Position numbers and translations under genes: made by a program
Shown: positions 5,560 to 60,954 of the stretch, piece by piece
How the letters are laid out: each line of letters begins with the position of its first letter
Position numbering within the stretch: position 1 is the stretch's first letter
Notes under the pieces: model-generated
What the model saw: the letters and a program-made list of their open reading frames with translations, nothing else
What the model was told of the DNA's origin: nothing
The model's database searches: none
NCBI RefSeq assembly: GCF_048593235.1
Contig: NC_133618.1
Span: 513,565,675-513,629,674 of the forward strand
Reading direction: 5' to 3'
Length of the DNA stretch: 64,000 bases
DNA from: Sminthopsis crassicaudata
Lineage: Eukaryota

Positions 5560-5670
5560 GTCTATCTCTCATTTTGAAGAGGAGGAAACTGAAATTCAAA
5601 GGGGTTTAAATGTCTTGCCCAAAGGTCACAGAGGTAACAAGAAGCAGATTGAGAATTTGGACCTAGGTCC
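5560..5670 (-). mobile_element. MIR/CORE-SINE relic
   Basis: cattttgaagaggaggaaactgaaattcaaaggggtttaaatgtcttgcccaaaggtcacag is a MIR core. Confidence 0.6.
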
Positions 5671-6966: not shown

Positions 6967-6972
6967 TTTATT
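6967..6972 (-). terminator. CDH24: Candidate CDH24 polyadenylation signal AATAAA
   Basis: tttatt on +, about 1.1 kb past the stop codon at 8051. Confidence 0.45.
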
Positions 6973-8050
6973 ATGAAATTAGAGATGAAGGCCCCTCCCT
7001 CCCTCCCACTTTCTCTCTTCCCAGCTTCTCCCCCCACCCCCTATCCCCCACATTCCCTTCCCCTTGGGACATGGAAGCACACGATGTGAAATGCCCAGAG
7101 TAGGCCAATAGCCAGACCACCCCCAGGGCCATAGCTCCCCAGAGATGTGGCCTGGGGGGCAGACTCAGGATTTTGGCCCCTTGGGCAAGGGCCTAGCTCC
7201 CTCTCCCCGCTGGAGGTCAGTTGGGCCAGGGTGAGGCCATGAGTGATGGATGGAAACCATGCGGGCAGGATCTGTAGGAAAATGAAAGGAGAGGTAAAGG
7301 TCTACATTCTCCCCTATCTCATTCCCAGTGTGAAATGTTCCCTCTCACTTAGCTCTGCCCCCAAGGAAGTAAGAGATCTCTGGAGGCCCACCCCTGTCCC
7401 TCTGCCCAGCTTCACTGATGAAGGGGCAGTGTCCGCTCCCCAGCACCAAGCTCTGGGTCAAGCACTGACCTGGGGTGAAGTATTCCCCATAGGCGGGTGG
7501 CATCAGTGGCTGGAAGTTTTCTTTTCTTGAGATGGGTGACGGAAAAATCAAAAAGCTGTTAAAACTTGGTCACAGAGACCCAGAGAAAACCACGGGGGTG
7601 TGGGCAGGAGAAACAGAGATGGATAGACATAGGCTGTGCAAGAGAGACAGGCAGGGAGAGCTTCAGGGGGAGGGACGGACGGACACGCTAAGTCTGACAA
7701 AAAGACACAGAGAGAAAGGCGGAGGCACACTTGGGAGAGCCAGAGAGAGAGGAAGAGCACACAAAGAAATGTAGAGTGAGAGGAAGAGAGGGAAGCTTAT
7801 TCAGACAAAGATGTAGGCAGTCAGAGAAGGAGACACACACAAAGAGACAGACAGGGACCCACGGAGTAAGAATTAGAGAAAAGAGACGGCAATAGGAAAA
7901 GGATCAGAGACTTGAGAGTGGAAGGACCAGTGGACCAGGGGCTGGTGGCTGCTGCCCACTGGACCCCGTGGAGCTCCCTCTGAGAGGGCATGTAAGTGGG
8001 CACAGCTTGGACAGGGGCTCCACAGAAACAGGCAGGATTAGGACTAGTCC

Positions 8051-19484: not shown

Positions 19485-22400
19485 CTAGCGGCGCCCACCC
19501 CTGTCACGCACTGGGGTGCTGCGGCTGCGGCTTCGACTGTGCCTTTTGGTGTCCCGACGATCCCTCTCACGGCCCCTTTCCCGATCCCGATCCCCCCGGT
19601 CCCTCTCCCGTTCCCGCTCTCTTTCCCTCTCTCGGCTGTGCTCGCGACGTTTCTCCCTCTCTAGCTGCCTGCTCCTCTCTCGCTCAGCCTCCTTCTCCCG
19701 TTCTTTCTGTTCTTCTTCTTCCTGTTCTTTTCGCCGTTTCTCACGCTCTTTGGCCCGCTCAGCCCGTTCGGCCTCCTTCTGAACAATCTGTGGAGCATGC
19801 AGGGGGAGTTAAAGAATGTTTGCTGCCTGTGCTTTTTAGCAGAGTGACCATGCCCATTCCTGTAACCCTGCCCACTCCCTTTTCCAGGGCCCTTGGGCTG
19901 TCTCCAGTTTTTATAAAAGAGAACACTAACCTGGCAGTCAGTCAGAGGAAGCCAGTAGATGCAGGGTGCTGCCTTGGTCTTACGGAACAAGTCATCCAAC
20001 AGCTTGGCAGGTGGCTCCTCCTGGGCTTTTTCTGTACAGACAGCAAATGGTTAGATTCTGGGTGAGCCCAGCCCTGATAAGTGGGCACAACTGCTACGGT
20101 CCAGCAGCTAGGGATGCAATACCTTTCTTTTCGCTCTTCTTCTCTTTGGACTTGGCTCGTTCCTTGCGGCGGCGGTCACGGGAGCGAGATCGGGAACGGG
20201 GCCCTTCACGAACCTTGTCCCGGTCCCACTCCCGTTCTGAGCGAGTACGTTCCCGTCGCTCCATCTCTCGCTCCCGCTCTGCCCACTGCTCCCGCACTGC
20301 CCGCTCCTGCTCCCTCTGCTCTGCCCTTGGATGATGAGGTGGCTGGGCTGGGGGCGGGGGCGGAGGGTGCAGGGGCCGTGGGCCTCCCTGCTCTTCAGTT
20401 TTAGGCTCAGAGGGTCGATCTGGTAAGAGGCCTCGGTGAAAATCCAGCTGTTGATAAAGAAGGGCAAATAGTGGGAGTGAAAACACTCTTAAGTAAATCT
20501 TAGTGGCATCTCTTCAGCAATTGTTATGAGATCAACTACGGGAGAAAGAATCTTTCTCTGTGAAGATCATGACCAAGGTGTCAGGGAAAATCCTCAATGA
20601 AAGGACTCTGGTGCTCTGGGTCCTCAGTTAGAATATGGGAAGATAAGATGCCCACCTTTTTTATCTTTTTCTTTCTAGGTTTCATACCTCATCCTGCTCT
20701 GCATAATCAGCACAGAGGAATTTGGGATTGCTCTGGGGCCATTTGACTCCATGTAGAGCTGTTCGAGTGGCAACAGCTTCCTCTACTGTTGAATACTGAT
20801 AAAAGAGCAGAGAAAACGATCACTTATATAAGCTTTCAGTTCAGTCACCATCCTACATCCAAGACCAGATCCCAAAGGACCCCAATAACTCTCTCCAGAG
20901 AGAAGTTCTTCTTCCTCACCGTGACATAGCAATGAGATTTGATTTTATCTATCCAAAAGGCTTCTTCCACAAGGGTTCCTGTACGACCCAGCAACTCCTT
21001 CAATTGGCCTAATGTAAAAGGACGAACCTGCCAATGAAAATGGGACGTCAAAAGCCACAAAGGAAAAAAGAGCTGAAATGTAGTCATTCTTTGTATTTCT
21101 CCAGACCCTGTAGGAATTCAGGCAGAATGCTTGGGAATGGATAATCTTTAGTGAAGGGTGGGGTTGGAAAAGACTTACCAAATTGGAGATATGGACAATG
21201 TTATTGATCTTGCCCCGAGGTGGTGAGGGCACCTGGGCTGTACGGACAGGATCATCAATTGTGATAGACACACCAGACTTCTGCTGGCTGATTGAACGCC
21301 GGGTCAGTGTGTCTCCCAGGGTCACTGCAAAAACAAAAAGCAGGAATGGTTGTCAGCAATAATCATACACATAACTATTTGATTATTACCTTCTCCACTA
21401 CACCTTCTTAGAAATCACCTTTTTTTACTTCATGCTCCACAGGTGGAGGCAAGGCAACTTCTACAGAAACCTGGGGTGCTTCAGGGGGCTCAACTTCAGG
21501 TTCTTTTTCTTCCTCCTCTTCTTCACGTTGTCCATTTTCCTGGCCCTCTGCTGGCACCACCTATAGAAGGGGAAAGTAAGAGAGCATCAGGGGCTTGGAG
21601 GCATTTCCTAACAATCATGTCATGTTAATAACCCTGACTTTTTCTGGTGAAGAAGAGAAGTATGGTAGATCTCAGAAGCTGTTTCTAAAATGCTAGGAAT
21701 GATGTTAAACGAGGCTTGTCATCTGTCCCTATTTGTGATAAGAAATACTGAATCAATGGAAAAAGAGACACAGTTCAAATTCTGACTCCTACCTCAACTG
21801 CCACCCTGTTCCCAGCCACTTCCAAATAGGGAGCCTCTCCATAACCTGGCTCCTTAGCACACCAAGCCTTTTTACCTGAGTAACAGTCCGGCATATCTTC
21901 AGCCCCTTGTCGTGGGTTCCATCCTCACCATTACGTTCTGTCTCATCTTCAGAAATCCTTGAGTCATCAGCATGTAGATCCACAATGGCCTCCTGCCCCG
22001 CCAGGGGTTTGATGTCGGGGATAAGGCTCTGGGACACAGATACCCCCCCACCCCGTTACACTGGGCCCATGTCTACTCCCACCTCCCCACATCCCACCCC
22101 TCAGGCTTTTCCCACCTCACCTTGAGAGACTCAGTGGTGATACTGATGGAGGGCTTCTTCTGCGTGGTGGCTGTGCTAGCCCCCCAACGCCGCTTCCGTC
22201 CTGGTTGTCCTCCTTCTGTGTCACTATTTCCAGCTGGTACCCCTTTGGTAGCCGCTATCCCCAAGAAACAAGGCTCAATTATGAGATGGTCAAGAGCTTT
22301 ATATTGGTTCCCTCTGTAACCCCACTGATCCATCTTTAATTTGGGATTTTTAACACAGTTAAACTAAGGCAAACCACCTTAGGGAATTATAGAAAACTTG

Positions 22401-25400: not shown

Positions 25401-28400
25401 CATATGGATAGGGGCCCCAGCACTGATAAAAGTTCTTCTTGAGGCATCCCAAGTAGGGAAATGGCACAAGTCCGCCCCTTTCCAGATGTACTTTGCTTTC
25501 TGAATACAAGTCTCTCCTGAACAGTACTCTTCTGGCCCCCTGCTGTAGGCAGGGCAGGGAGGCAGGTGTGGGGAGCCCCCCCCAGGAGCCCACATACAAC
25601 AACCCCCCTTCTGGCCGAGGCACCAGGATAGCAGACTCGGCTCTTACTGGGCAGCTCAGTAGCAGCGGGTGGGTCCAGAGGAGGAGNNNNNNNNNNNNNN
25701 NNNNNNNNNNNNNNNNNNNNNNNNNNNNNNNNNNNNNNNNNNNNNNNNNNNNNNNNNNNNNNNNNNNNNNNNNNNNNNNNNNNNNNNNNNNNNNNNNNNN
25801 NNNNNNNNNNNNNNNNNNNNNNNNNNNNNNNNNNNNNNNNNNNNNNNNNNNNNNNNNNTACACACACAACAATCCCACCCACCCTGTGCCCCCAGCTCCC
25901 AAACCCAACTAAGACTTTCTCTATTACTACAACAGCCAAGGAGATTTTGCTGGCTCGGATTGGGGCAGTCCTTGAATTGGATGCATGGCATGAATGAATT
26001 AAAGAAAAACAGAAAGGATCACCATGGATAAAAACAGAGAAAGGAATTCTCCATGAAGTACACTTATATACATCTCAGCAAAGGGACCACTGGGGGGCAG
26101 ATAGAGAACTCGAATTTCCTCAGCATGGTTAGTCTATGGTGAAAAATCCCATAAGCCCACTAGGGGGCAATGCTTTCTAACAGGATAAAAAGGAGGGAAA
26201 GCAAGGTGACTATCCCCAAGAGACTGAAGATGATAGTAACAAAAACTGAGCTCTGAGTTTGAAAAAATAATTTAAGGAAGGAGGAAAATCCTAACAAGAA
26301 CTAGTGCCCCTAGTGTCAGCCTACCAGGATATAACTAAGCAGCCCGAAGTAAAAAGAACAGCTGAGATTTAGAGCTAATGTCCTAGAAATCTGTAAAGGA
26401 GAAAGGAAAAAGAAAAGCAGAATAGTGTCCCCCTTAATTCAATCTCCAATTGATCAATAGAAGAGAAGAATCCCAGGAGCAAAGCTTTTTTTTTTTTTTT
26501 TTTTTTTTTAAACAAGAAAGAAATATTAAGCCTCATTCCCAATACAAGGGGCATCCCTTGCTAAACCAGCAAATTCTCCCTTTTGGCCCTACACTGATTA
26601 ATGTCCTGTCTGCCGCTGGGACCTACAGGTCCCAGATCTCTACTGAGCAAAGATCTGCCTTGTCCCTTCATTCTGAACTCATCCCACTGTTCAAAGGGGG
26701 TCACCAGAGTGGCCTACCCTTTTTCCCCAAGGGTTGTCCCCCACCCTCACCAACAGGAGGCTTTGAAATTTACCTCTTTCTTCTCCTCATCCTCTGCATT
26801 GCCCTCAGGGCGCTCTTCATTGCTTGCAGCATCAGCAATGGGCATGGGGGGCTCAGGCACCTCATTCTCAGGCCTGTTTTCAGCTGTCTCCATGGTCACT
26901 TCCTCCTTCTCCTCGCTGACAATATGGGGGGAGGAGGGGGGAGGGTAGGAAAGGAAGGGCAGGAAAAGAACCAAGGGGAACAGAGAGCAAGATGTTAGCT
27001 CGTGAGTCAGGAAACCCCCATGCTTTGTCACTGGGGATGGGGGTGGGGTGGGGATGGGTTTGGGATACTTTCCCTATCATATAAGTATTTAGCACCTACT
27101 GACTGCCTCAGTTCTTTGGGCTTGAGGCCTAACTCAAGTCCAGAGGAAGAGGTAAGATCTTCTTTTACCCTAAGAAAGAAGGGCAATTAGCACTAATCAC
27201 AAGAACCATATCCTTCCCAGCCAGGCTGTGATGGGTCTGGGGTATTGAAGCTTTAGTGTCTCTGGCACAGTCCAATATCACTAATCAAGGTTCAGTACAG
27301 GTTTTTATTCCTATCTTCAATGATCCCTCACGTGATTCTATCAAAACTGTCAGTTAATAAACACTTATTAAGCATCTATGTGCAAGACACTTTTGGGGGT
27401 CTTTTTCTCAAAAAGATGATAATGTCTGGTCATGGCTATTGTCACTGATCTTAGGTGAAAGCCTATCCAAAAGCTTAAGTAGCTTTTAAATAGTCCATTC
27501 ACTCATCTGACCTGGAGATACCAGGAATGAAGGAAAAAAACAGAGGGTTACCTCACCAAAAAAAGGTTTTAAGCCCCCACCCTTTCACCTCCCCTCCATC
27601 CTGACCAGCTTAAGGTAGAACTTAAGGTAGAATCGTATACCTTTTACCAAGAAGGTGCAGAGGCCACTCTGATATTCAGCTGACCCAGCTTTTCCCAGTA
27701 TCCCACTCTTACTTTTAAAGAATTAAAGAGCTAACCACTCTTAAGTCGGAACACACCTATCATTTCCCCAAATACCCTCAATGCTTTGAATAACCCTCCC
27801 CTTATAGCAAAAGCACAGAATCCTTGATCCCATTCTAGAATACACAAACTGCCCCCCCCCATTCCCACGAAAGTAATTCCAGAGATCCATCTTTGAATAA
27901 ACTGCCTCTCAATCTTTAGTCCCCACCCCTAACTTCACTCTCCCTCCCCCACATGCTTTAAAAAAACAAAAAAAAAAAAAAAAAATCAAATCAAGATGAC
28001 CAGGGGCCTAATTCTCTGGAGGAGAAACCAAGCCTCCTGGCGTGATAATAACCACCAGGAAATCCAGCAGGCTGATAGCCTGACATACAGAGGTCAGAGA
28101 GTCTCCAGAGAACAGACTGAAGAAGGCTGTTGGGGGGGGAGGGGAAAATTTATACAGTGCCCCAAGCTAGCAGGCCCCGACAGAAACACTCAAGGATTTA
28201 ACAGTCTAAATTTAAAGCACAGGCTAGCCTGAAAAATGCCTATTCCCCACATAGAAAGGGCCTGATTGATATTAGGCTAGAAAGACAAAGAAGAGTAAAG
28301 CAGGATGTCTAAAAACAATTAAAAAAACAAAAGGAGAAATGAAGGCCACAGGGGACAAGAGAAAAAAAACGAGGAGAGGAGGGACAGATGGGAAAGGGAG

Positions 28401-31400
28401 GAGAGACATGGAANNNNNNNNNNNNNNNNNNNNNNNNNNNNNNNNNNNNNNNNNNNNNNNNNNNNNNNNNNNNNNNNNNNNNNNNNNNNNNNNNNNNNNN
28501 NNNNNNNNNNNNNNNNNNNNNNNNNNNNNNNNNNNNNNNNNNNNNNNNNNNNNNNNNNNNNNNNNNNNNNNNNNNNNNNNNNNNNNNNNACCTTCCTTGT
28601 CCCCAGCTCCCACCACCTCCTCCCGGCCCCAGATCCAGAGAGAGAAAATCAAGAGATGCAGCAACTGGGGATCCAAAAAAAAAAAAAAAAAAAAAAAACA
28701 AAAAAAGGTAAATGGAAGGGGAGGTGGTGGTGGTGAGGGGAGATTGAAATAATATATCTGGCGTTTAAGAGATAAGCGTTAAGTCCTCACGGCAAACCCC
28801 GGGTTGGCTGGGCCAGTCTCTCTGGAGAAGGAGGAGGAGGAGGAGGAGGACGGCCAGGTTGCTAGTAGTGGCTGGCTCTATTGTATTGGAGGAGCGGCAG
28901 CGATCAGCCGGAGACATGCAGGGGAGCCATCTTGCCACTTACCCAGCAGTCTGTGTGCAGAGAGGGGAGGGCCCTGCTGCAGCAGGGGAGGGGAAAGCTG
29001 AGGAAGGGAGGGAGGGAGGGGGCGGGCAGGCGAGCGAGTGAGCGATCGAGGCTCTTCTCCTTAGGCAAAGCAGGCCACGGGGAACTCGCTCGGGGTTGGC
29101 TGAAGAGGCCTGGCCTTTCCCCCTTCGGTACTCACTCGAGTTACAATGGCTACCAGGGGCTGACCCCAGGGGGAGGCCTACTCTCTCCTAGTCCTCAGGA
29201 GAAGGGCCGAAGGCGGGGAAAACATCGAAAGTTAATGCTGCTTACTTTACTTGGAAGCTTCCAGAGGACGAGGAAGAGAAAGAATTGGATAAAAGAGATG
29301 GGTGAAGAACAAGGCAACAAAGCCAGGGATGAAGCAGATATGGATAGATAGGATATAAGCAGGAGTCTCACTGTCTTCCCCCTCCCACCACACACCCATA
29401 GCTCCCCTCCCCCACACTCCCAGGGTGGAACCTGAAACCAGATCAGCCAGTCGGAATCCTAGGGGTTGGGGGGGGGAGGTGTTAATTAACTGTACTACTG
29501 AGTCACCATGGGAACAGGTCAGCTTTGCAGCTGTAAGGCCCATGTGTTACTCCCCACCACCCCTTTTCTCAAGGACAGCTGGTTACTGGAAAGTGAGAAG
29601 GGAAGAGAAAAAAGATAGGGTCTCTAAAGAGATGACAAAACTTTGTTTGGTAGTGCTTTAATAATGCCATCTTTGCCTCACGGTAGAAACACAAGCAAAG
29701 AAAAAGACTGAGGCAGCCTTTAAGTGACTTGAGTGTGAGAGATATTCGGCCCCAGGCTGCTTGTTCCTCTCAATTTGAGGGGAGAGCAATGTGACTGGGA
29801 GGGGGGGGGGTCAGATGCTCTAGCTTCTAGTCCCAGTTCTACAACTCCTTTTGCAGTCCTTAAATCAATTCCTTTACTCATCTGGGTCGTTTTCTTCATT
29901 TGCAAAATGAGGGCATCAGGATAGATCATTTGAAAGGTCTCATCCAGCTCTAATGATTTATGATAACTAAGAGGGGACCAGGAATGAAGTGAAGTTAAAA
30001 GGATGAGGCAGAAGAAAAGCCTATGCTATACAGGAAGGAGCAGCCTGAAGTCCAGAAGACAAAGTCAAGCAGAATCATTACCACCATAACAATGGTTTAG
30101 TGTGGAAGTTATTTTTGACAAAATGAAGCATGGGTAGGCATTCAATAAATATGCGTTGCCTTAAGATCTGCTTCTAAGAGTAACCCCAAGTCCAGCATCT
30201 CTCTTGCAAACACCAAACTTTTAATCTCAGAAATGAGGCTTCCTCCATACCCAGCGAAGGATACTCTAGGCTATAACCTGGAAAGCTAGTAAAGGCCTCA
30301 CTTCCTTTCTCTCTGCTTCTCAATGACCAATCTAACCAATCTGTCACTTTTACTTGGCTGGAAGACTTCCTAAATCAGGTTTTTAAAGGCCTTAGCCAAC
30401 ATTAATTCATATGTGAATATTTAATATAGATCTTATTTGAAATGATTCAGGTAATTTTTGGGATACTCTAAAAGTTGGATAGTTCTCTGACATTATGATG
30501 ATGAAGTGATTGATGGTTTCAAAGACGTCAATCTAGATATGAAGTAGATGCTAAATAAATGCTTGTTGAATATATATACAAGGGATTTCCCTAAAAATAT
30601 TTTATACAGAATATCCATATAAATCATTACCTTCCAACACCTTCCATTTTGAGCTGGGCTGAGATTACCACCTACTGTCCTGAGGTACTTTCCAACTGGT
30701 AATATCCTTCCCCAGAAAAAGCTTCCTTTAAGGAAGAATTCTGTATTAAAAGTGTGAGGTTATCGTGCTGTCCTTCCTCCCTTGTCCTCAAAACTGTAGG
30801 AATTCTTACCATCCCTCCATCCTTCTCAAGACACAGCAGGTTTGTGCTTTTCATATGCCCAGATTATCCTATTAGAATAAATTCTGTGAATGTGTTAAGA
30901 GATCAAAAACCTCATGAGAAGAAAACAAAACATAACCTGAAAAGTGAGGTGGTAGACTAATCTCTCATAACCTTAGCTCTAAGATTGTTTTAGTGAGCTT
31001 TTGCTGTACCACTCATATCTTAGGGGAAAAAAAGACATGTTTTATCCTTTGCATTCATTTACAAATATCCCTAATAAACTTAAAAGTGTGAAAACTCCCT
31101 TTTATGTATTTCCACCCATTATTAGTGGTACAGTATAGTAAGATGAAGCCCAGACGAAAAGTACAGTGTAACCTGGAGGTAGGAAATTCATGTTAAGAGT
31201 TCAAACTGAAATGAAAAAAAAAATGTAAATAGGAGTTCAAATAAATAGTTTGGACTAGTTAATGGAAAAACAAAATAACACACTACATACACATGGTGGA
31301 ACTCAAGCCCCAAAGTTATTCCAAACGATTCAAGGGAACTGAAAAAAATTGCTATGGAAAGACCCTAGGGTTTGGTAATAAGGATTCCAGATTAATAATT

Positions 31401-48900: not shown

Positions 48901-51900
48901 GGAGTACCCTACCACTCACTACCAAATATGTATGTATTTCATTATTTGGCTCTCTTCACGATTCCTGGCTATCCTTTAAAAAAAAAAAAAAATTAAGATT
49001 ATACATGTATATATATATTTTACGTATATCCATACGAATCATGTTGGGAGAGGAAAATCAGAACAAAGGGGAAAACAAAAAAACAAAAATAAAAAAAAAA
49101 AAAAAACGAAGGAAAAAAAGATGAAACCAGTATGCTTCAATACATACTCAGTCTCCATAGTTCCCTCTCTGGATGTGGATAGCATTTTCCATTCAAAGTT
49201 TACTGGAATTGCTTTGCATCACCAAATTGTTGAGAAAAGCTAAGTCTATCACACTTGATCACCACACAATCTTGCTGTTACTGTATACAATATTTTCTGG
49301 TTCTGCTACATCACTCAGCATAAGTTTATTAAGTCTTTCCAGGCTTTTCTGAAATCTGGCTATATATTTTTTTCTCCACTAGTGATGATGACAAGTATAG
49401 CCTAGCAGTGAACTCTTACCATTAGACACTGCTAAAACCCTGATCTCTAAATCTTTTCTTGCTATTTTGTTCATTTTTATTATCATCATTATTTACTTAG
49501 TATTTTATTTTTCCTGGTTAGATGTAAACCATTTTTAATATTTGTTTTTAAAACTCCTGAATTCCAGATTTCTCCCCTTCCTCCCTTCCCATCCCCCTCC
49601 CCCACTGAGAGGGCACATGATGTTATGCAAAACATTTCTATAATGTATTCCTTTTTATTCCATTCTATTTATGCCTTTAATCTTTCACTTTCACCTCAAA
49701 AGCATAGTTGATAGTATTCCAATGTGCTCACACCATTCATATACTCAAAAATCTTTGACTCTCCAATATTCAAGAATAATTCTCTAGAGCTAGTAGTAAA
49801 GTATAGATTTTATAGTTTAGCATTAAAAATTTCAAATACTTCCAACTTTATCTCTTACTGCTCCCCAAAATGAACCCTTTACTCCAAACAAATTAGTTTC
49901 ATTTCTTGAAAATGCCATGTACATTTCTACTTTCAACCTTTATATCATGACATTTTTCCTGGTTCTAACAATGCCCTCTAGACACTGATGCATTGTTGGT
50001 GGAGTTGTGAAAGAATCCAACCATTCTGGAGAGCAATCTGGAATTATGCCCAAAAAGTTATCAAACTGTGCATACCCTTTGACCCAGCAGTGCTACTACT
50101 GGGCTTACATCCCAAGGAAATACTGAAGAAGAGAAAGGGACCTGTATGCGCCAAAATGTTCATGGCAGCTCTTTTTGTAGTGGATAGAAACTGGAAAATG
50201 AATGGATGCCCACCAATTGGAGAATGCTTGGGTAAATTATGGTATATGAATGTTATAGGATATTGTTCTGTAAGAAATGACCAGCAGGATGAATACAAGG
50301 AGGCTTGGAGAGACTTACATGAACTGATACTGAGTGAAATGAGCAGAACCAGGAGATCATTATGTACTTCAACAACAATATTGTATGAGACTGTATTCTG
50401 ATGGAAGTGGATGTCTTCAACATAGACAAGATCCAACTCACTTCCAGTTGATCAATGATGGACAGAATCAGCTACACCCAGAGAAGGAACACTGGAAAAT
50501 GAGTGTAAACTGTTTGCATTTTATGTTTTTCTTCCCAGATTATTTTTACCTTCCGAATCCAATTCTTCCTTTGCAACAATAACAACAACAAAAATTGGTT
50601 CTGCACAAATATATATTGTATCTAGGATATACTATAACATATTTAATATGTATGGGAATGCCTGCCATCTAGGGGAGGGGGTGGAGGGAAGGAGGGGAAA
50701 ATTCGGAACAGAAGGGAGTACAAGGGATAATGCTGTAAAAAAAATTACCTTATGCATGCATATGTACTGTCAAAAAAAGTTATAATTATAAAATTAATAA
50801 GAAAAAAAAGAAGGAAAAAAAAAACTGGCATGAAAAAATTCTCCAAATCATTAATACTTAGAGAAATGCAAATTAAAATAACTCTTAAGATTCTACTTCA
50901 TACTTATAAGATTGGCAAAGATGTTCCAAAAAAAAAAAAAAAAGGAGGGAAAACAACTGCTAGAATAGTTGTGAAAAGATGGGCAAACTGATATATTACT
51001 GATTGAGTTATGAAATGGTCCAGCAATTCTAGAAAGCAATTTGGAACTTTCTGTATATACACTGTGCATACATATTCTTTGACATAGTGATACCATTAGT
51101 AAGTCTACGTCCCAGAGAGATTAGAAAAGAACTCTCATGGGCTATAAAAATACTCATAGCAGCTCTTGTTGCAGCAAAGAACTGGATCCTAAGAAAATGG
51201 CTATCAAGTGAGGAAAGGTTGAACAAATTAAAAATTTCTAAGAAATAAAAAAGGAGATAGTTTCAGAGAAATACAGGAAAATATATATGAACTTATGCAA
51301 AGTCAAGTAAACAGTAACAGGAGGATAATTTTATACAGTTAACAACAACACTGTAAAGAAAAACAACTCTGAAAGATTTGAGAATTTGTCAAAGTGCTCA
51401 CTGATCACTCATGATTCCAGAGGAACCAAATTTGAAACATGGTACCTACCAATAAAAATAACTGCTGACTCAAGGTGCAGAATAAGACATTTTTTGGACA
51501 AGGAAAATGTGAATTAGTTGTCTGAATATGCTTTTTTGTAACAGCAGTTGTGTTTTTCTTTTTTTTTTTTTTTTAATAAGAGGAGGGGAGGTTGAGAGGA
51601 AAAGGTTGCTAGCAATAATGTTGCCAAAAAAAAAGAAAAAAAAGAAAAGAGGGTCATTGAAACATTTCAAAAAATGCAGAGAACAAAGAAGTTCAGAAGG
51701 AAGCACAGACAAGGATGACAGTTATAAAAGTAACATGCTTAATTTATTATATACCTTTTAAAAAAAACAAGTTGCACGTATTAAACACTTGCAGTTCCAT
51801 ATATAATCCTTTTCTGTTTTGCTTTCTTCATGAAAATATTGTTTTTCATGTTTAAGTTCAGAATTAAAAAAAAAATTTTAAAGGAGCAAAAGAGACTCAA

Positions 51901-54900
51901 TAAAACATTTAAAAAGAAAAAAAAATTCTATGTATGATTTAGTAGACGGTTACTTCCACTTGAAAGACTTCAGTTAAAAGTACAGTATGATCAAGGATAA
52001 AATTTGCCAAATAATGAGAAGAGCCTAGGATTTTAAAAGAACCTATTAAGTTGTCAAAAAGAACTGCTTTCCAATTGAGCTAAATTGTGGGATATGAGCT
52101 GAACTGAACTCTTAAGTTGGCTTTAAAATTTAGCTAAACATGTGTCATTTTAATTACCAATAAGAAACAATTGTTGTTGCTGGCTTAGAGGCTCTTTTAA
52201 TAATCTACTTCTGTATCAGATCCTTCTTCAAAACAGTGTTTTATCTTTGCAATGTCCTTCCCTTCTTCTAGTCTACCAAACATTCTCATAGTTAAAAAAT
52301 TCCTAAAATCTTACTTCTATGAAACCTTCTTAGACCAGAAGACTATTTCCCATCACTTTATCTAATCTAAAACCAATAAACTTTTATTTAGCATTTTGAG
52401 GTTTGAAAAAACATTTTGTTCATTACAAATCTGTGAGGCATTTCACAGATGAGAAAGGTAAGAAAAGTTAAATGATTTTCTCTTAATCACATAGTTGATT
52501 AAATATCTCCAGAAAAATTCTAATTCAAATCTTTTAAGCTAACTTTCAAGTTGAGGGTTTTATCCACTATACCAATGCATAGGTAGGGAGTTCCCTTATC
52601 ATTATGTCTTTGGCTTCTGTTCATTGTTATTCAGTTGTGTTTTCATGAATGCATTTGGGATTCTCCAGATTTGTCCTTTCTTTCTCCAGCTCACTTTACA
52701 GATGAGGAACTAAGGCAAACAGGATTAAGTGATTTGCCCAGGTCACACAGCTGTGTCTTGATAAAATGTCACATTTCAACTCAGGCAGATGAGTCTTCCT
52801 GATTCCAAGCCCAATGCTCCATCCATTGTCCACAACCTATCCTTAGACACACTTAATCAAAGTTTATATAAAATGATAATATTTTACTATTCACATATTA
52901 GTTTTTTATCTTATTATCTATATATATACTTTATACTAACCCGAGTTATCATGAAAGCATTTGTCTTTAACTGCCAACATACATAGCTGGAAATGACCAG
53001 GCTTAAATAACTTTCATTGATAGCATCTTATTAGGTACAAGACACACAATGAATTCTGATGACATTAATTAATGATGGTGAAAACTCAGAAAACTACTGT
53101 AAGATACTTATTGGGAAGGAAAGCTGGATGTGAGGTGACAGGTGTGAGTTCTAATAGTATTGCTATGATTACTAACTAAATTCAGGATAGAGGTGGCTAA
53201 GATGATTTATTTTAAAAAATACATACACCCCAAACTTTAAAAAAAGTAAAACAGAAATAAAATGAAAGCAGAATCAAAGGGACACGAATTCTATAAGATA
53301 AGGTAGTTAGAATTTCCCTGCAATTGTCATGCAGCCTTATTTAAAAAAAAAAAAAAAAAAAGGGCGGGATAATAACTTCAGCCCCATCAGCTTTGCAGTG
53401 CAGAGGGGAAAGATGCATACTAGCTGAGTATCTACTGACCTCTAGGTGTGGTGTCTCCAAGCTGCCCTGAAACACAGGAGGCAGCAAGGAAACCACTCCC
53501 TCAGGATGGATCATCTTGTTCTCTGACTAGGCTGAGACTTCTACAAAGCACAGAAGGGGGGGGGGGGGGGAAAGGAAGGGAGGGAAACAGCTCAACATGT
53601 GGAAATGAAGTGAAGGACAAAAAGCTATGAACACAATCTCTGTCTCTCACACACACACATACCCTCTCAATCTATCTAGCAGACATCTTTTATTCCAGAT
53701 CTATCTGCTGGATGGAATGGTTCCAATGAAAATAAGTCAACTCAAACTTCTTTCTCTGACAAAAAGTAAGTGGTTAGTCTCATGGGTCAGAGACAAAAAG
53801 TAGAAATTCCAACCTGTAATACTTATTAGTGAAACAGTATTGTCAGAAAAACCTATCGATATGAAAAACTCATTTTCTTTTATCTCCTAGAAAAGAAAGA
53901 GGCTGACAATCTAAGGTTACCTTCAAGTTCTGCAGCTTCTCGAGCTTCTCGTTCCAGTCGCTGCCTGAGAAGTTCCTGCTGCTTTTCCAGATATTGCTTT
54001 ATAAAGCTATTCTGGCTCATTTCCTCACCAATCTGTAAAAAACAACAGAAAGAATAAGAATCTCAGAGTACAACACAAAAGAATAAAACAGGAAGAAAGC
54101 ACAATGGAAGAAACATCTAAAAAAATATGATGGGCTGTGTGTCTCACAAAGTAGCAATAGAAGGAATTAGGTGCAATCTTAATTCTAACCATCCAGTTCA
54201 AACTGATACAATCCAACTTGATGTTTTATCTTACATAAATGTTAGCAAGAATTATAGTTTAAAAGATTGTACATGGTTATTAATCTTTATCAGAATGTTT
54301 GTGAGTAATGTTCTCTCTAAAATGTAATGTTGTCTGTTGAGGTTTTCTTGGGGTCTCTAAGAGCAGCCTTCCTTGCAGTTCAGGGGTTAAAGTCCAAATC
54401 CTTTATTGTCTCTTTCAAAGTCTTATCTCCTTCACTTGGGACTCGGCTAGTTGTCTGGAGGCCTTCTGGAGTCTTGGTTTCAGTGGAGAAGCAAAGGAGA
54501 AGAGCCTGCCACTAAGGCAGTGTGAGATGGGATGAATCTGTCTGAGTCTAAGGGTTTGTGCTCCAGCCTTCAGCCCGCTTGTCTCTGAATCTCTGACTCT
54601 CCCTGGCTGAGGTTTCTACCTTATATGCTACACACTGAGTATACACCAATCATTATATCACTAGGAAATCATTATTTGTTGCAGGGATAAATCAATGCTA
54701 AACTAGATTTAGCCATTGTCTCCTCAATTCCACTTAATAGCTTGTTTCAAGTTCTGGCCCATAACATCTTGTAGGATTATATCAATCATTCTGAACCATG
54801 CTAAATTAGATAACTATTGTCTTTATCAATTCCACTGATTTAGTCCCTTGTAAGAATCCTTTGTTTCATGTTCAGAGTTCTGGTCCATAATACTTGTGGT

Positions 54901-57900
54901 CATGGTAAGGGAGGAAGGGAAAGAAATTTGGAATACAAAATCTTACAAAAATGAAATGCTGAAAACTATCTTAATGTGTATTTGGAAAAATAAAATACTA
55001 GTGAGAAAAAACATTTATAGCTACAATGTATGCGGATTTCATAAGCCTTTTTACAATTTAGAATAATTTAAATTATTTGTGTCAACTAAAGAGATAGGCA
55101 ACTGAAGAGACAAAATTTTCACCATTCTCTATCAACACACAGAAAAGCCTAATAGTCTCCATAATTTAGATTGAGTAGTTAAAAACCTGTCCATCTATAT
55201 GCTAAGTAAATTTATAATTCAGCTTTTTTGGAGTTGTGGCAAAATTACTGAAAACTAACAATTTAAGGCTCTTTAAGACTCTAAGAACCATTTTTTTAAA
55301 AAAGAAAAGACTTCAATAAAGAAATAAAACTTTTAAAATATTTAATATTTCACAAGGCCTGGATCTTAGGTAGAGATCAGAAGATTTATAAACAATTTAA
55401 GCCCATGTTTGTAAGAACAGAGCTGCTAGGTTGGAAACACTACAACATAGAGCACGGCTTAGCCTGGGCCAGTTTATTAGGTTGTTAAAGTACCTGAACT
55501 AGAGCTTTGTAAACTGGCAGGATTAAGGAAGTGTCTGGCTTAATGAGGAGATAACAAGGGAAAGGTGGGGCCTCAGTGGAGTTTGTTTTTCCCTAGTATC
55601 CTGGGACTTAATCTAACAGTGAAACTGTAAATGTTCAAAATAAGAGAGGCTTGTGTTTGTCCTTTAATGTTCTGCTATAGAACCAGACTATCAAAATTGA
55701 AAGGAACTTTTACAGATTTAAATACAACTCTTCTCATTTTAGAGATTAAAAAAATGGAGACCCAGATAGCTTTGATGACTTCTCCAAAATCACATAACCA
55801 ATCAAACAATAGCAAGCTCCTACTATGTGCCAAGCACTATGATAAGAGCTAGGGATATAAAGAGGCAAAAGACAGTATCTGCCAAAGCAAACTACATATA
55901 GGATAAACAGGAGATATTAAAAGAAAAAAGACAATGGAATTAAGAGGGATTGGGGAAAGCTTCTTTTAGGTGAGATTTTAGTTGGGACTTAAAGGAAGCT
56001 ACAGAGGTCAACAGTGTTTCAGACATGGGTGACAGCCAGAAAGAATGAATGCCTGGAGCGAGGAGATGGAGTGTCTCATTTGTGGAACAGCCAGAAGGCC
56101 ACTATCACAGCTAATTATATCCAGAAGGAAAAGGATTAAAACTTATTTTTTCAAAATTAAATGATCTACAAGACTCTTATTAAATGGGAGAAATTAGTGG
56201 GTAACCTAGTTCTGGCTACCATTTATAATTCTATGTCAAAATAAGCTCGTTTGTCCAAACTCTTCTAACAAAATGTCAATTTCAAATTTATATCCAGTAT
56301 CATCATGATAATTTTTTTTTTCTCTTAAGTGGAAAATAGATGCTCTGACATTCTGAACCCACTCTAGGTTATTCCTCTTAACAATTCTATTAAACCCATA
56401 TGTGAATGTCAGAAAGTAACATGACAGCTCTTTTCCTTAGGATCTTGTAAATGACTGAAATGAACTAAAGAATTCAATAGCTTTAGGAGAGAATTATGTG
56501 AACTGGGAAGGATTTCAGTAATAAAAATTTCAGGCACTGGTATGTCCATATTTACATCAGCAGCCCACTATTATTAAATGAAACCTTTCTCTTACCTGGG
56601 AATTTGGCTGGAATGCAGTGTGAGGTGTTGAATGTTTCTGTAAATTCTCCAGCATTAGAGCCTGGGATAAAGACAGAAGAAACTCAGAAACCCAAAAAAG
56701 TCAAACCCTCTTCCTCCACCCCCTTTTCCAAATGAAAAACTAACCATATACACTCTAATTAAGCTTATTTTCCAAGGACTTCAAAGTCCTTTATTAATAT
56801 TGCTTTCATTCAGTTTCAGAAGAACCATAAGGGCAGCCATGCCAATTGTCCTCAACGTACAGATGCAAAAACTCAGAAATACATAAATTAAAGCCAGTTA
56901 TATACTCCTGTCCAAAAAACCCAAAAAACCCAAACCAAACCAAAACAACAACAACAACAAAAAACCAAGCCAATGACAGATTAGGATTCTCAGTTATTCT
57001 ACCTTTAGCTCTCAAACCTGGCCTTGCCTGGCCATCACATTCAATTCAAAGATTAAAACTTCCCTTAGAGTTCCAAATTAATGCTTAATTGCTGTTCTTA
57101 TTTTGACAGAGAGCTGATAAATTAATAGAGCACAAGCTCTTTGAAATGGGCTTGTACAGCAGCGAATTCAAGAGTAAGTGCTTTATAATTCTTTCCAAGA
57201 GGTGTACATGCCCAAATAGCTAATCAAAAATTAAATAAATAAATAATAAACTTAAGCCACTTTGGTTTATCACAACTGCAAGTTGGTTTGACTAAACATG
57301 AAAGAGAACAATCATTATTAATCCTAGATCCAACAACCCAATCCCCAAAACTATTTGTTCCCCAGACAACACAACCTCAAGGCCAAGGCCAAACACTGTC
57401 AACTCAAGCCCATTACTCCCTGTAAAATGTTAACCCTACCCTAATTCAAACACTGACATTATCTCCTAATTCAACTACTCCAAATCTATATTTTTATCAA
57501 TTAAACTACCTAATGGCAAACCCTCACTGATTACCAATTTTCAATATTATCTACTCAAATCAATCATATCCAAGGTCTTCGAAACCACACTAACCGGTCT
57601 TGTTTCCTCCAGTGAAGACAACTCTACCTCAATTGGGACCCCCATAAACAAATAGCCCACAACCAGCCAAGCCCCTTTTCCAGTTTTTTCCTTCACTTCA
57701 TTCTCCAATATAATTAACCCCTTCAGTGCCAACCTAAACAAGCCCCAGTTCCTATCTACCTTCTTAGTCAGACCCGGTCTTCCCGATAACAACCCCAACC
57801 GCCACTTTGCCCAACTATCCCTCTAACTCTGAGTCCTCCTCCCCCCCAACCCCCCCCCCCCGTCGCCAACCCCCGCCTTCCCACGGGTCAATAACACTAG

Positions 57901-58372
57901 TGGTGGTGGTGGGATTTAACTCCTGCCGCGCATGCGCCGAAACCACAGACACAAACAAGGAGGGGGTGGGGGAGGAGGAAGCGCAAGACACTCTAGGGAA
58001 AGCAGCGCGCACCCTCCCGTTTCGAGCTCGCGTAGCTGCCGTTAAAGGCGGGAACCGGCACGGGCTCCCTTCCAGCACGAGCCCCACCAACCACCGCGCG
58101 CGCGGATCCAAAGGCTCGCGCTGGCGGCCTGAGCGAGCTCGCGCCGAGCCCGGATACTGCGCCTGCGCCGCCGCCGCGGCTCGTCTCTACCGGGTCCGCT
58201 CCCCTCCGACGCCCCTGCGACGCAGTCTCCTTACCCCTTTGAGCCGCTTGACCAGAGCACTCTTCTGTCCACTCTTGGCCAGGCCTCGCTGTTCTAGTGC
58301 GGCCTTCAGGTCGGTCACCCGCAGCGCCTGAAGCGGCTTCCCGTCCAGAGTCACCTCCTCCAGCTCCGCCAT
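19485..58372 (-). CDS. ACIN1: Apoptotic chromatin condensation inducer 1 (Acinus-L); 1245 aa without exon 4
   Basis: Exons, all GT-AG with consistent phases: 58372-58235, 56661-56596, 54032-53921, [53540-53421 exon 4 with stop], 44230-44142, 38231-36948, 36397-36170, 34766-34651, 26915-26774, 23066-23024, 22254-22121, 22028-21876, 21560-21419, 21324-21179, 21027-20920, 20795-20688, 20447-20123, 20031-19931, 19787-19485. Sum without exon 4 is 3738 nt. Domains: SAP ([28 protein letters not shown]), acidic and RS tracts, RRM ([19 protein letters not shown]), caspase-3 site DELD across the 20688/20447 junction, RSB motif [13 protein letters not shown]-terminal RDRGGRR*. Confidence 0.96.
24297..24530. 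other. Assembly gap (234 N)
   Basis: N run. Confidence 1.
25687..25858. other. Assembly gap (172 N)
   Basis: N run. Confidence 1.
28414..28589. other. Assembly gap (176 N)
   Basis: N run. Confidence 1.
28791..28917 (-). CDS. ACIN1: Alternative first coding exon of the short isoform Acinus-S' (internal promoter about 28900-29150); 1 nt short of frame as assembled
   Basis: ATG at 28917 reads [34 protein letters not shown]..., matching the recalled human Acinus-S' N-terminus [30 protein letters not shown]. Donor |gtgagg at 28790. Confidence 0.8.
29720..29960. mobile_element. MIR-type SINE relics
   Basis: ttaagtgacttg.. and tttcttcatttgcaaaatgagg..gaaaggtctcatccagctct MIR cores. Confidence 0.5.
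35698..35925 (+). mobile_element. 5'-truncated marsupial L1 3' end
   Basis: ttcttcccagattatttttacctt...ggagagggggtggag...aaaaattacccatgcatat..aataaaaa; similar to the L1 tail at about 50520-50800. Confidence 0.75.
38468..38680 (+). mobile_element. MIR/MAR1-like CORE-SINE
   Basis: gtatggcatagtggata..gagtcaggaag..tgaccctgagcaagtcatttaac. Confidence 0.65.
39040..39850 (+). mobile_element. Old degenerate L1 (ORF2 3' part and 3' UTR)
   Basis: aaaagctttttgcacaaataaaaccaatgcag..ggtcaaaggatatgaacaggcagttttcag..gaagacttatgagctgatgcagagtgaaatgaacagaac. Confidence 0.75.
39714..40071 (+). repeat. Tandem duplication, period about 187 bp, with a (TA)n expansion in copy 2
   Basis: tattttcttccagtggaaat at 39714 and 39901; both copies end aataaaattttacaaagatagagaaaa. 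Confidence 0.85.
40476..42929 (-). mobile_element. Composite of three head-to-tail L1 3' fragments (40476-41391, 41392-42037, 42038-42929) flanked by a 17-bp TSD
   Basis: Each fragment has its own A-rich tail and ORF2-end peptides ([31 protein letters not shown]). TSD tctatgccttaaatctt 40459-40475 and tctatgtcttaaatctt 42930-42946. Confidence 0.85.
43440..43590. mobile_element. L2-like relic
   Basis: gttccttgagggagggactg..gtattcccaggtcttagcacagtg..tttaatatttactgact. Confidence 0.5.
44515..44660 (+). mobile_element. MIR-like CORE-SINE
   Basis: cagtggatagaattctggacttggattcaggaaaacttgag..gtgtgatccaggccaagtcact..ataaaatg. Confidence 0.6.
45672..45809 (-). mobile_element. Young marsupial tRNA-derived SINE (WSINE1/SINE1-like)
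   Basis: ggggttaagtgacttgcccagagtcacacagctag..gatttgaactcaggtcctcctgact..ctctaaccactgcaccacctagctgcccc; A and B boxes on the minus strand. Confidence 0.8.
46385..46590 (+). mobile_element. MIR3-like relic
   Basis: ggtacagtg..cccagagtcagaaagaccagag..agtttcctcttctgtaaaatagggataatagcacc. Confidence 0.55.
47300..47390 (+). mobile_element. Partial marsupial tRNA-derived SINE
   Basis: ggaggatccaagttcaaatctg..cagctgtgtgaccctgggcaagtcacttaacccc. Confidence 0.7.
48990..49355 (-). mobile_element. Older L1 3' fragment
   Basis: catagttccctctctggatgtggatagcattttcc..catcactcagcataag..tctttccaggcttttctgaaatc. Confidence 0.7.
49981..50823 (+). mobile_element. 5'-truncated marsupial L1 with poly(A) tail
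   Basis: ORF2 C-terminus ([22 protein letters not shown]...[11 protein letters not shown]), G-rich 3' UTR, A-rich tail about 50795-50823. Confidence 0.9.
50825..51900 (+). mobile_element. Old degenerate L1 ORF2/3' UTR fragment
   Basis: [18 protein letters not shown] peptide, then atactcatagcagctcttgttgcagcaaagaactgg. Confidence 0.7.
52690..52840 (-). mobile_element. MIR/CORE-SINE
   Basis: ttacagatgaggaactaaggcaaacaggattaagtgatttgcccaggtcacacagc..caactcaggcagatgagtcttcctgattccaagccc. Confidence 0.7.
53421..53540 (-). pseudogene. ACIN1: ACIN1 exon 4 homologue (120 nt, phase 1-1) with an in-frame TAG at 53529-53527; poison exon or decaying cassette exon
   Basis: tttgtag|AA GTC TCA GCC TAG TCA GAG AAC AAG ATG ATC CAT CCT GAG GGA GTG ... 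TCA GCT A|gtatgc = [39 protein letters not shown]. Recalled human: [40 protein letters not shown]. Confidence 0.85.
54323..54902 (-). mobile_element. Possible solo LTR with a duplicated U3-like segment
   Basis: TG...CA-like ends; on the minus strand ATATAA (54626-54621) precedes AATAAA (54407-54402); internal repeat of about 124 bp (54652-54775, 54776-54897). No TSD found. Confidence 0.4.
55820..56100 (+). mobile_element. L2-like relic
   Basis: ctactatgtgccaagcactatgataagagctagggatataaagaggcaaaagacag..ggatttggggaaagcttc-like purine-rich L2 3' region. Confidence 0.55.
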
Positions 58373-58920
58373 CTTGTGTGAGGTACTCGGCTCCCGTCTC
58401 GACGGCTTCGGGCATCTTCGGTAATTTCCGCCAACGCCCTTCGAACGTGCCGATCCGACCCCGCCCACTGCCACGGCCAACCCTTTTCCCCTCCCTGTAA
58501 GATCCGAACGTTCAGCCTTTTCGAGAGCATTCGGGTATTTCCGTCCCTATTTTAGCACCAATCACCGGCTTCCATTCTTTCCATAGGCTCCGCCCCTCGC
58601 GACTCCTCTCAGATCTCGGACAAATCCGCCCTACCGAGTTTAGGACTAGTTTTCATTTGTAAACAGTGGCAGCGCAGGATTCGGAGACCCTCGGCTTTCT
58701 TCGGCTCCTCTGCTCCGGAGATACTGTCCGACTTCCTGGTGCCGAGGCCCTCGGGGAGTGGAAGGGGGTTCGGTCCTTGTTTGAGGTCCGGAAGTGCGTG
58801 GGTTGCCCAGTGGGGTTTGCTGGGAACTTGGCGATAGCTGAGGTAGCCGGAGCTCACGGACTCCTATGACTTCCTTCTGAGGTCCCCCGGGGTGAGAATC
58901 GAGAGGTAAGCTAGGAGGCC
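57850..58920. promoter_or_regulatory. Bidirectional CpG-island promoter ACIN1 / C14orf119
   Basis: CpG-rich. YY1 motif CCGCCATCTT 58366-58375 over the ACIN1 ATG; CCAAT 58558-58562; GC box about 58589; ETS ACTTCCTG 58731 and CCGGAAGT 58788-58795; C14orf119 non-coding exon donor GAG|gtaagc at 58905/58906. Confidence 0.8.
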
Positions 58921-60534: not shown

Positions 60535-60954
60535 ATGTCACTGAAATCACCTGCTGCTTGGATATCACCATCCTCCTCCTCAACTTTAGCCACTACTCCA
60601 GACAATTATTCCTTCCTCTCCATGTCTTACTTCACTTCACAGGAGATGAAGTGTGTTCTACATTGGTTTGCCAACTGGTCAGATCCCCAGCGTGAGCGTT
60701 TCCTGCAGGACTTGGTAACTAAGGCAGTGCCAGGCAAATTACAGCCCCTCTTAGAAGGATTGGAACAGCTTAGTGTGTCTGGAGCAGATCGACCACCACA
60801 CATTTTTGATTGCCAGCTTCGACTCTGGGATCAGTGGTTCCGAAGTTGGGCTGAAGAAGAGCGCAATGAGTTTGTCAGACAACTGGAGGCCAGTGAGCCA
60901 GACTTTGTAGCAAAGTTCTATCAAGCAGTGGCTGCTACAGCTGGTAAGGACTAA
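60535..60954 (+). CDS. C14orf119: C14orf119 homologue, 139 aa, single coding exon (acceptor cag| at 60533, 1 nt before the ATG)
   Basis: MSYFTSQEMKCVLHWFANWSDPQRERFLQDLV...FVAKFYQAVAATAGKD matches the recalled human protein; head-to-head with ACIN1 as in human. Confidence 0.93.
   Translation: MSLKSPAAWISPSSSSTLATTPDNYSFLSMSYFTSQEMKCVLHWFANWSDPQRERFLQDLVTKAVPGKLQPLLEGLEQLSVSGADRPPHIFDCQLRLWDQWFRSWAEEERNEFVRQLEASEPDFVAKFYQAVAATAGKD

What the first reader, a model, noticed from the sequence alone, without database searches (positions are those of the whole stretch)
53421..53540. ACIN1 exon 4 carries an in-frame stop: a coding cassette exon that may have become a poison exon
Seen: a 120-nt exon with intact AG/GT and symmetric phase 1-1. 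Codon 5 is TAG (53529-53527) where the recalled human codon encodes Glu. About a third of its residues differ from recalled human, while exons 2 and 3 are nearly identical. Skipping is in frame (GAA G|GA AAA). This is a substitution outside a homopolymer, so it is less likely a long-read error. Known: Acinus is an EJC-associated ASAP-complex splicing factor; many splicing factors autoregulate through NMD poison exons; I recall a human isoform lacking this 40-aa exon. Inference: in this lineage inclusion triggers NMD or yields a roughly 109-aa SAP-domain-only product, selectively tuning Acinus-L and not the internally promoted S isoforms. Alternatively the exon is decaying.
Basis: partly seen in the sequence, partly recalled or inferred. 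Interest (0 to 1): 0.75.

Follow-up and report, generated by a model that had tools for sequence, protein, structure and literature searches.

The report
Ancient stop codon in ACIN1 exon
The stop codon in this small, skippable exon of the dunnart's ACIN1 gene is real and is shared by eight of the nine marsupials I could compare, so it is an old loss of coding use rather than a sequencing error; whether the exon now works as an off-switch is untested.

Summary
Observation confirmed. On the minus strand, 53540-53421 is a 120-nt, phase 1-1 exon of ACIN1 with AG/GT, and its codon 5 is TAG (53529-53527). Skipping it joins exon 3 to exon 5 in frame.

The stop is not special to this animal and is not an assembly error. 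Orthologous loci were fetched through the neighbouring gene C14orf119. They show the same TAG in Sarcophilus, Antechinus, Dromiciops, Trichosurus, Vombatus, Notamacropus and Gracilinanus. Petaurus has TGG, and the eutherian Echinops has GAG. A tortoise has no such exon, and there exon 3 is followed directly by exon 5.

Exon 4 is therefore a mammal-specific optional cassette that lost its reading frame at or before the marsupial crown. Further damage has accumulated:
- Trichosurus has lost both splice sites.
- Vombatus has lost the donor.
- Notamacropus and Gracilinanus carry frameshifting indels.

Yet the 5' half of the exon changes about three times more slowly than most surrounding intron, with no codon-position signature.

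Most likely it is a non-coding relic cassette whose inclusion would be unproductive. A selected poison-exon role is possible but unsupported.

The parts
53421..53540 (-). ACIN1 exon 4 ortholog, 120 nt, phase 1-1, non-coding in the exon-1 frame because of the stop
   Evidence: orthologous to the open 120-nt exon of Echinops
53527..53529 (-). In-frame TAG, codon 5 of exon 4
   Evidence: same TAG in 7 other marsupials, TGG in Petaurus, GAG in Echinops
53541..53585 (-). 3' splice site AG (53542-53541) with a long pyrimidine tract that includes a C15 run
   Evidence: AG kept in 8 of 9 marsupials, AA in Trichosurus
53415..53423 (-). Weak 5' splice site CTA|GTATGC
53481..53540 (-). Slow-evolving 5' half of exon 4 (purine-rich core ...TCAGAGAACAAGATGATCCATCCTGAGGGAGTGG...)
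   Evidence: 0.23 Fitch steps/site against 0.38-0.91 in introns and 0.12 in coding exons 1-3; relative rate 0.34
53512..53514 (-). ATG at codon 10, four codons after the stop (possible reinitiation site; speculative)
   Evidence: kept in 7 of 9 marsupials, lost in Vombatus and Notamacropus
53523..53524 (-). AG of a possible in-frame alternative acceptor (tcAG|AGAAC), 18 nt into the exon, that would bypass the TAG (speculative)
   Evidence: Read from the sequence; not tested
53921..54032 (-). ACIN1 exon 3 (112 nt, ends in phase 1).
44142..44230 (-). ACIN1 exon 5 (89 nt), in-frame partner of exon 3 when exon 4 is skipped
   Evidence: the tortoise has exon 3 followed directly by exon 5
56596..56661 (-). 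ACIN1 exon 2 (66 nt)
58235..58372 (-). Coding part of ACIN1 exon 1 (MAELEEV...RLKG), SAP domain
   Evidence: Pfam SAP, E=6.3e-10
36948..38231 (-). ACIN1 exon 6 (1284 nt, 428 codons)
19925..20050 (-). Exon encoding the RSB motif (Acinus hallmark)
   Evidence: Pfam RSB_motif, E=2.5e-19; PDB 4a8x chain B, E=1.9e-12

Best explanation
Exon 4 of ACIN1 is a mammal-specific (at least therian), optional 40-codon cassette. It is absent from a tortoise, where exon 3 is followed directly by exon 5. In the marsupial stem lineage its fifth codon changed from GAG to TAG. The skipped mRNA is the ancestral, fully functional form, so the loss was tolerated, and marsupial Acinus-L is made from the exon-4-skipped mRNA. 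The exon has since persisted as a non-coding relic. It has been further broken in several lineages. In the dunnart and other dasyurids it keeps AG/GT, a strong pyrimidine tract and a weak donor. Any inclusion there would place a stop 106 nt before the exon 4-5 junction, which by the 50-55-nt rule predicts NMD or a 109-aa SAP-only fragment. The slow evolution of the exon's 5' half is best read as a leftover or still-active RNA-level element (for example a splicing enhancer cluster), not as protein coding. Shown here: the exon anatomy, the shared stop, the lineage-specific lesions and the rate differences. Inferred: the direction of the change, skipping in vivo, and the NMD fate.
For: Anatomy. 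Shared TAG in Sminthopsis, Sarcophilus, Antechinus, Dromiciops, Trichosurus, Vombatus, Notamacropus and Gracilinanus; TGG in Petaurus; GAG in Echinops. Tortoise: exon 3 and exon 5 are 1.1 kb apart, and the best local match to exon 4 in that intron scores no better than shuffled queries. Extra lesions: Trichosurus acceptor AA and donor GA; Vombatus donor CT and a 3-nt deletion; Notamacropus a 16-nt deletion and ATG to GTG; Gracilinanus a 5-nt insertion carrying another TAG and an 8-nt deletion. The four splice-site bases of exon 4 took 3 changes, as expected for intron sequence (P=0.38) and not for coding-like constraint (P=0.013). Every aligned splice dinucleotide checked for exons 1-3 is intact; one (the exon 2 acceptor in Petaurus) was unaligned. 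No coding signature: 21/10/13 steps at codon positions 1/2/3. The annotated ACIN1 products of Antechinus and Trichosurus carry both SAP (exon 1) and RSB_motif (3' end), so they cannot read through the exon-4 TAG. Marsupial products are 1233-1261 aa against 1290 aa in Echinops. Human exon 4 is a validated skipped exon.
Against: Exon 4 is not evolving neutrally. It shows 0.38 steps/site overall and 0.23 in the 5' half, against 0.8-0.9 in the flanks and 0.54-0.60 in introns 2 and 4. Proportional rates are 0.34 and 0.78 for its two halves, against 0.71-1.51 for introns. For the 5' half, P=1.6e-4 against 0.55/site, but only 0.03 against the slow intron 1. Six of nine species keep both splice sites, the stop and an indel-free exon. 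That pattern is also what a maintained NMD cassette would show. No RNA data were seen, so skipping in the dunnart is inferred and not observed. Without a monotreme the direction GAG to TAG is not proven.
Confidence: 0.6

Rival explanations
1. Selected poison exon. Since the marsupial stem, exon 4 has been kept as an AS-NMD cassette that tunes Acinus-L output, possibly through feedback from Acinus and the EJC.
For: The cassette has intact AG/GT, a strong pyrimidine tract and a PTC 106 nt before the next junction. TAG is retained in 8 of 9 species. The exon, above all its 5' half, evolves 2-4 times more slowly than most intron, and the trough in substitutions coincides with the exon borders. Indels after codon 5 would not harm a poison function. 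Poison cassettes are common in splicing regulators (reviews PMC10321290 and PMC12179342, listed; not read here).
Against: Splice-site dinucleotides change at about the intron rate; both are lost in Trichosurus and the donor in Vombatus. The stop is lost in Petaurus. So three of four diprotodontians cannot use it as a poison exon. The immediate intron flanks are the fastest-evolving stretches nearby (1.0-1.3 steps/site), unlike the highly conserved flanks I recall for classical poison exons (from memory, not checked here). The conserved 5' half stays conserved even in Trichosurus, where the exon can no longer be spliced in. No inclusion data exist.
Confidence: 0.22
2. The exon is still used for protein. 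The TAG is bypassed by the in-frame acceptor 18 nt downstream (giving a 102-nt exon starting G|AG AAC AAG ATG), by reinitiation at the ATG of codon 10, or by readthrough.
For: tcAG|AG at 53524-53523 keeps phase 1-1. The ATG at 53514-53512 has A at -3. 35 codons after the stop are open and indel-free in six species. Petaurus has a fully open exon.
Against: There is no third-position excess (21/10/13). The ATG is lost in Vombatus and Notamacropus, and the frame is broken in Notamacropus and Gracilinanus. The canonical AG lies directly after the pyrimidine tract and would normally be chosen (general knowledge). Reinitiation after a 109-codon ORF is inefficient (general knowledge).
Confidence: 0.06
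3. Reversed polarity. The newborn therian exon carried TAG from the start as a non-coding exon, and eutherians later turned it into a coding cassette by T to G.
For: The exon is absent in a tortoise, and no monotreme sequence was reachable, so parsimony cannot polarise the change. New exons usually begin as rarely included ones (general knowledge).
Against: A symmetric 120-nt exon with 35 further open codons in both lineages is unlikely by chance: about 0.19 for the open frame times 1/3 for the length (my estimate). The 65% amino-acid identity between the dunnart and Echinops exons (26 of 40 residues) fits an ancestral coding exon.
Confidence: 0.1
4. Assembly or base-calling error in this genome.
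Against: The same TAG sits in the same conserved context in seven other species' assemblies. It is not in a homopolymer.
Confidence: 0.01

Closest known systems
Eutherian ACIN1 exon 4 (coding alternative cassette; skipping validated in human cells, PMC8070448 and PMC9825188)
   Same: Orthologous 120-nt, phase 1-1 exon between the same neighbours. It is 81% identical in DNA to Echinops over 124 nt, has a weak donor, and is optional.
   Different: Codon 5 is GAG and the exon is open in Echinops. Marsupials carry TAG, so inclusion cannot yield full-length Acinus-L. That the papers' 'exon 4' is this same exon rests on numbering only; I did not compare human sequence.
AS-NMD poison cassette exons of splicing regulators (e.g. 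SRSF3 exon 4, review PMC10321290)
   Same: A cassette exon with an in-frame stop in a gene for a splicing and EJC-associated factor; the skipped form is the productive mRNA.
   Different: This one derives from a formerly coding exon. The flanking introns are not conserved. The splice sites and even the stop are lost in some lineages. Neither inclusion, NMD sensitivity nor feedback has been shown.
Lineage-specific exon death (pseudo-exon left in an intron after loss of an optional exon)
   Same: A nonsense change is followed by splice-site losses and frameshifting indels in several descendant lineages. Gene models appear to skip it (inferred from product domains and lengths; the models themselves were not seen).
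   Different: The 5' half remains about three times more conserved than typical intron after an estimated 70-90 million years (date from general knowledge), which plain decay does not predict.

Membership tests
ACIN1 (Acinus) ortholog | N-terminal SAP domain | tested here: met
   Pfam PF02037, E=6.3e-10, on window:58235-58372:-
ACIN1 (Acinus) ortholog | C-terminal RNPS1-SAP18 binding (RSB) motif | tested here: met
   Pfam PF16294, E=2.5e-19; PDB 4a8x chain B, E=1.9e-12
ACIN1 (Acinus) ortholog | Conserved neighbourhood, head to head with C14orf119 | tested here: met
   C14orf119 lies at 60535-60954 (+). In 8 marsupials, Echinops, platypus and a tortoise, a 1231-1290-aa gene on the opposite strand sits next to it, with SAP and RSB hits recorded where looked up
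AS-NMD poison cassette exon | Cassette exon with usable splice sites, and a productive skipped form | tested here: met
   AG/GT and pyrimidine tract present in the dunnart; the skip is in frame. By sequence only
AS-NMD poison cassette exon | In-frame stop more than 50-55 nt upstream of a downstream exon junction | tested here: met
   The TAG ends at exon position 14, 106 nt before the exon 4-5 junction, and many exons follow
AS-NMD poison cassette exon | Inclusion seen in RNA and stabilised when NMD is blocked | not testable with these tools
Protein-database searches returned no marsupial transcript fragments
AS-NMD poison cassette exon | Purifying selection on the exon, stop, splice sites and flanking intron | tested here: inconclusive
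   The 5' half of the exon is slow (0.23 steps/site against 0.38-0.9). But the splice sites change at the intron rate, the stop is lost in Petaurus, and the flanks are fast
AS-NMD poison cassette exon | Feedback by the gene's own product | not tested
   Needs experiments
Decayed (dead) exon | Evolves at the neutral rate after the disabling change | tested here: not met
   The whole exon has 46 steps against about 66 expected (P=0.006). The 5' half has 14 against 33 (P=1.6e-4). The 3' half is neutral-like, 32 against 33
Decayed (dead) exon | Secondary disabling lesions accumulate in descendant lineages | tested here: met
   Splice-site losses in Trichosurus and Vombatus; indels in Vombatus, Notamacropus and Gracilinanus

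The most novel reading that the evidence does not exclude
The exon is a marsupial-wide unproductive-splicing switch, roughly 80 million years old by my estimate. It would have been made by a single nonsense change in a formerly coding cassette of an EJC/NMD-linked splicing factor. In this reading it is still maintained in dasyurids, Dromiciops and others through its conserved 60-nt enhancer-like core, and it sets the level of the SAP-containing Acinus-L isoform independently of the shorter isoforms.
Probability: 0.2. Interest if true: 0.6.

Novelty: new member of a known kind. Interest (0 to 1): 0.35.

Why it matters
The result dates the event: one base change, at or before the common ancestor of living marsupials, removed 40 residues from the coding repertoire of Acinus-L in the whole clade. 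The exon concerned is a mammalian novelty that eutherians still use as a regulated cassette. That makes a natural experiment on what the exon-4 segment of Acinus-L does, since marsupials live without it. It is also a clean case for asking how long an optional exon survives after a nonsense hit, and why part of it stays conserved. If the exon proved to be a regulated NMD cassette, it would show how a poison exon can arise from a coding exon by one substitution. As it stands, it is a modest comparative-genomics observation, and marsupial gene models seem to handle it correctly by skipping the exon.

Tried and rejected
There is therefore no read-level check of the base and no junction counts.

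2. Fetching marsupial ACIN1 proteins or transcript ORFs. Word searches with exon 6, whole and with region 61-375, returned only eutherian exon-6 fragments. The exhaustive representative search returned three fragments. Full-length models lie outside the length range of a single-exon query.

3. Outgroups. The platypus locus reaches only exons 1-2. The sloth C14orf119 locus has no ACIN1 beside it.

4. L002 (GCA_048593225.1) is N over 1-8633, exactly where ACIN1 would lie. I left it alone.

5. Conserved RNA structure. RNAalifold gave 32 pairs, none with a compensatory change. Rejected.

6. Known RNA family. Only a chance-level bacterial sRNA match, E=0.62. Rejected.

7. Recursive-splice exon. The exon starts AAGT, not GTRAGT (read). 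Rejected.

8. The internal donor GAG|GTCAGT would give a 101-nt, out-of-frame exon. Rejected as a rescue.

9. My suspicion of a frameshift in the 5' extension of exon 1 was wrong. The out-of-frame upstream ATG is conserved in all mammals checked.

Full report
**What is there.** The window carries ACIN1 on the minus strand. Exon 1 encodes a SAP domain and a 3' exon encodes the RSB motif. C14orf119 lies head to head with it at 60535-60954, as in other amniotes. The 87-97% DNA identity to Sarcophilus and Antechinus fits a dasyurid.

I mapped the 5' exons one by one:
- exon 1 coding part: 58372-58235
- exon 2: 56661-56596
- exon 3: 54032-53921, ending in phase 1
- exon 4: 53540-53421
- exon 5: 44230-44142
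- exon 6: 38231-36948

Exon 4 is 120 nt and phase 1-1. It is preceded by a long pyrimidine tract and AG, and followed by GTATGC. It reads G|AA GTC TCA GCC TAG, so TAG at 53529-53527 is codon 5. Skipping gives GAA G|GA AAA in frame.

I used the single-exon neighbour C14orf119 as a handle instead. Its marsupial orthologs led to genomic loci with 10 kb of flank that include ACIN1 exons 1-4 in eight other marsupials. The exon-4 region aligns without ambiguity. Codon 5 reads as follows:

| Species | Codon 5 |
|---|---|
| Sminthopsis, Sarcophilus, Antechinus, Dromiciops, Trichosurus, Vombatus, Notamacropus, Gracilinanus | TAG |
| Petaurus | TGG |
| Echinops (eutherian) | GAG, in an open 120-nt exon |

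The stop is therefore real. It predates the split of American and Australasian marsupials, roughly 70-90 million years ago by general knowledge.

**Origin of the exon.** In a tortoise, exon 3 (...AAELE|G) and exon 5 (KSYPIS...) are 1.1 kb apart. The intron between them holds nothing resembling exon 4: the best local alignment scored no better than shuffled queries. The skipped junction is therefore the ancestral amniote form, and exon 4 is a mammalian, at least therian, addition. The platypus locus was too short to show it. In human cells, ACIN1 exon 4 is a validated alternatively skipped exon (PMC8070448; PMC9825188). That it is this same exon rests on numbering; I compared no human sequence.

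**What has happened since the stop.** Several lineages carry further lesions:
- Trichosurus has lost both the acceptor (AA) and the donor (GA).
- Vombatus has lost the donor (CT) and three bases.
- Notamacropus has a 16-nt deletion and ATG changed to GTG.
- Gracilinanus has a 5-nt insertion carrying another TAG and an 8-nt deletion.

Every aligned splice dinucleotide checked for exons 1-3 is intact; one, the exon 2 acceptor in Petaurus, was unaligned. The four splice-site bases of exon 4 took three changes. That fits intron-like evolution (P=0.38) and does not fit coding-like constraint (P=0.013). Substitutions fall 21/10/13 on codon positions 1/2/3, so there is no protein-coding signature.

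The annotated ACIN1 products of Antechinus and Trichosurus contain both SAP and the RSB motif, so they must bypass the TAG. Marsupial products are 1233-1261 aa against 1290 aa in Echinops.

**The exon is nevertheless not neutral.** I used a dunnart-anchored alignment of nine marsupials. It left out 53915-53957.

| Region | Fitch steps per site | Proportional rate, IQ-TREE |
|---|---|---|
| Exon 4, whole | 0.38 | n/a |
| Exon 4, 5' half | 0.23 | 0.34 |
| Exon 4, 3' half | 0.53 | 0.78 |
| Flanking intron | 0.81-0.91 | 1.35-1.51 |
| Intron 2 and distal intron 4 | 0.54-0.60 | 0.98-1.11 |
| Intron 1 (CpG-rich) | 0.38 | 0.71 |
| Coding exons 1-3 | 0.12 | 0.18 |

Tree lengths from separate fits were 0.44 for exon 4 against 1.02-1.16 for the flanks. 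The trough in substitutions coincides with the exon borders. The 5' half has 14 steps against about 33 expected (P=1.6e-4), but only P=0.03 against the slow intron 1. It stays unchanged even in Trichosurus, where the exon can no longer be spliced. The core ATGATCCATCCTGAGGGAGTG is identical in Echinops. No conserved RNA structure and no known RNA family explains this.

**Reading.** The best-supported account is an optional, mammal-specific cassette that lost its reading frame in the marsupial stem. The loss was tolerated because the skipped mRNA is the ancestral functional form. The exon now persists as a non-coding relic.

In the dunnart it still looks spliceable. It has a strong pyrimidine tract but the weakest donor of the six ACIN1 donors scored. 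Any inclusion would put a stop 106 nt before the next junction, which predicts NMD or a 109-aa SAP-only fragment. This step is inferred.

The poison-exon idea remains possible, at about one in five. The slow core and the retained TAG speak for it. The loss of splice sites or of the stop in three of four diprotodontians, and the unconserved flanks, speak against a function conserved across the clade.

Minor alternatives are:
- bypass of the TAG through an in-frame acceptor 18 nt downstream (53524-53523), or reinitiation at the ATG of codon 10;
- reversed polarity, with TAG ancestral and the eutherian GAG derived.

An assembly error is excluded.

**Known or new.** It is a new instance of a familiar process, lineage-wide loss of an optional exon, with one unexplained feature: the conserved 5' core.

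**Decisive test.** Junction counts in the existing dunnart RNA-seq and Iso-Seq (PMC11091235), with and without NMD inhibition, would settle it. I could not run this.

Noticed in passing
L009:3007-3126 (Petaurus breviceps), orthologous to window 53421-53540: Petaurus alone has TGG instead of TAG at codon 5, and its 120-nt exon is fully open with AG/GT intact. This could be a reversion to a coding cassette, or a base error in that assembly.
   Followed up: partly
L008:4141-4174 (Gracilinanus agilis, intron 2 of ACIN1): A second 34-nt copy (30/34 identical) of the conserved 5' core of exon 4 lies about 900 nt upstream of the exon. It carries the Gracilinanus-specific TCAAAG variant, so it is a recent local duplication.
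   Followed up: partly
window 58413-58415 (minus strand), 43 nt upstream of the MAELEEV start at 58372: An upstream ATG ([17 protein letters not shown]...), out of frame and overlapping the main start, is conserved at the same distance in all eight other marsupials, platypus and Echinops. It is absent in the tortoise. It looks like a conserved overlapping uORF.
   Followed up: partly
   Followed up: no
window 24297-24530, 25687-25858, 28414-28589: Three N runs lie inside the ACIN1 gene body, so the full coding length could not be summed from the window. I did not fill them.
   Followed up: no
window 211-1008 (+), 8051-8623 (-), 60535-60954 (+): Neighbouring genes are a proteasome beta-subunit-like ORF (PSMB11-like by eye), a cadherin cytoplasmic-tail ORF (CDH24-like by eye) and C14orf119 (DUF4508, 98% identical to Sarcophilus).
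   Followed up: partly
window 40500-42800 and 49970-50450 (ACIN1 intron 4): Several LINE-1 ORF2-like fragments (e.g. ...LLGLYPKEI...) fill the 9.2-kb intron between exon 4 and exon 5.
   Followed up: no
window 53556-53570 and 53343-53362: A C15 run lies just upstream of exon 4 and a T20 run about 60 nt downstream. Other dasyurids have these tracts shorter or interrupted, and such tracts are error-prone in long-read assemblies. They do not touch the stop.
   Followed up: no
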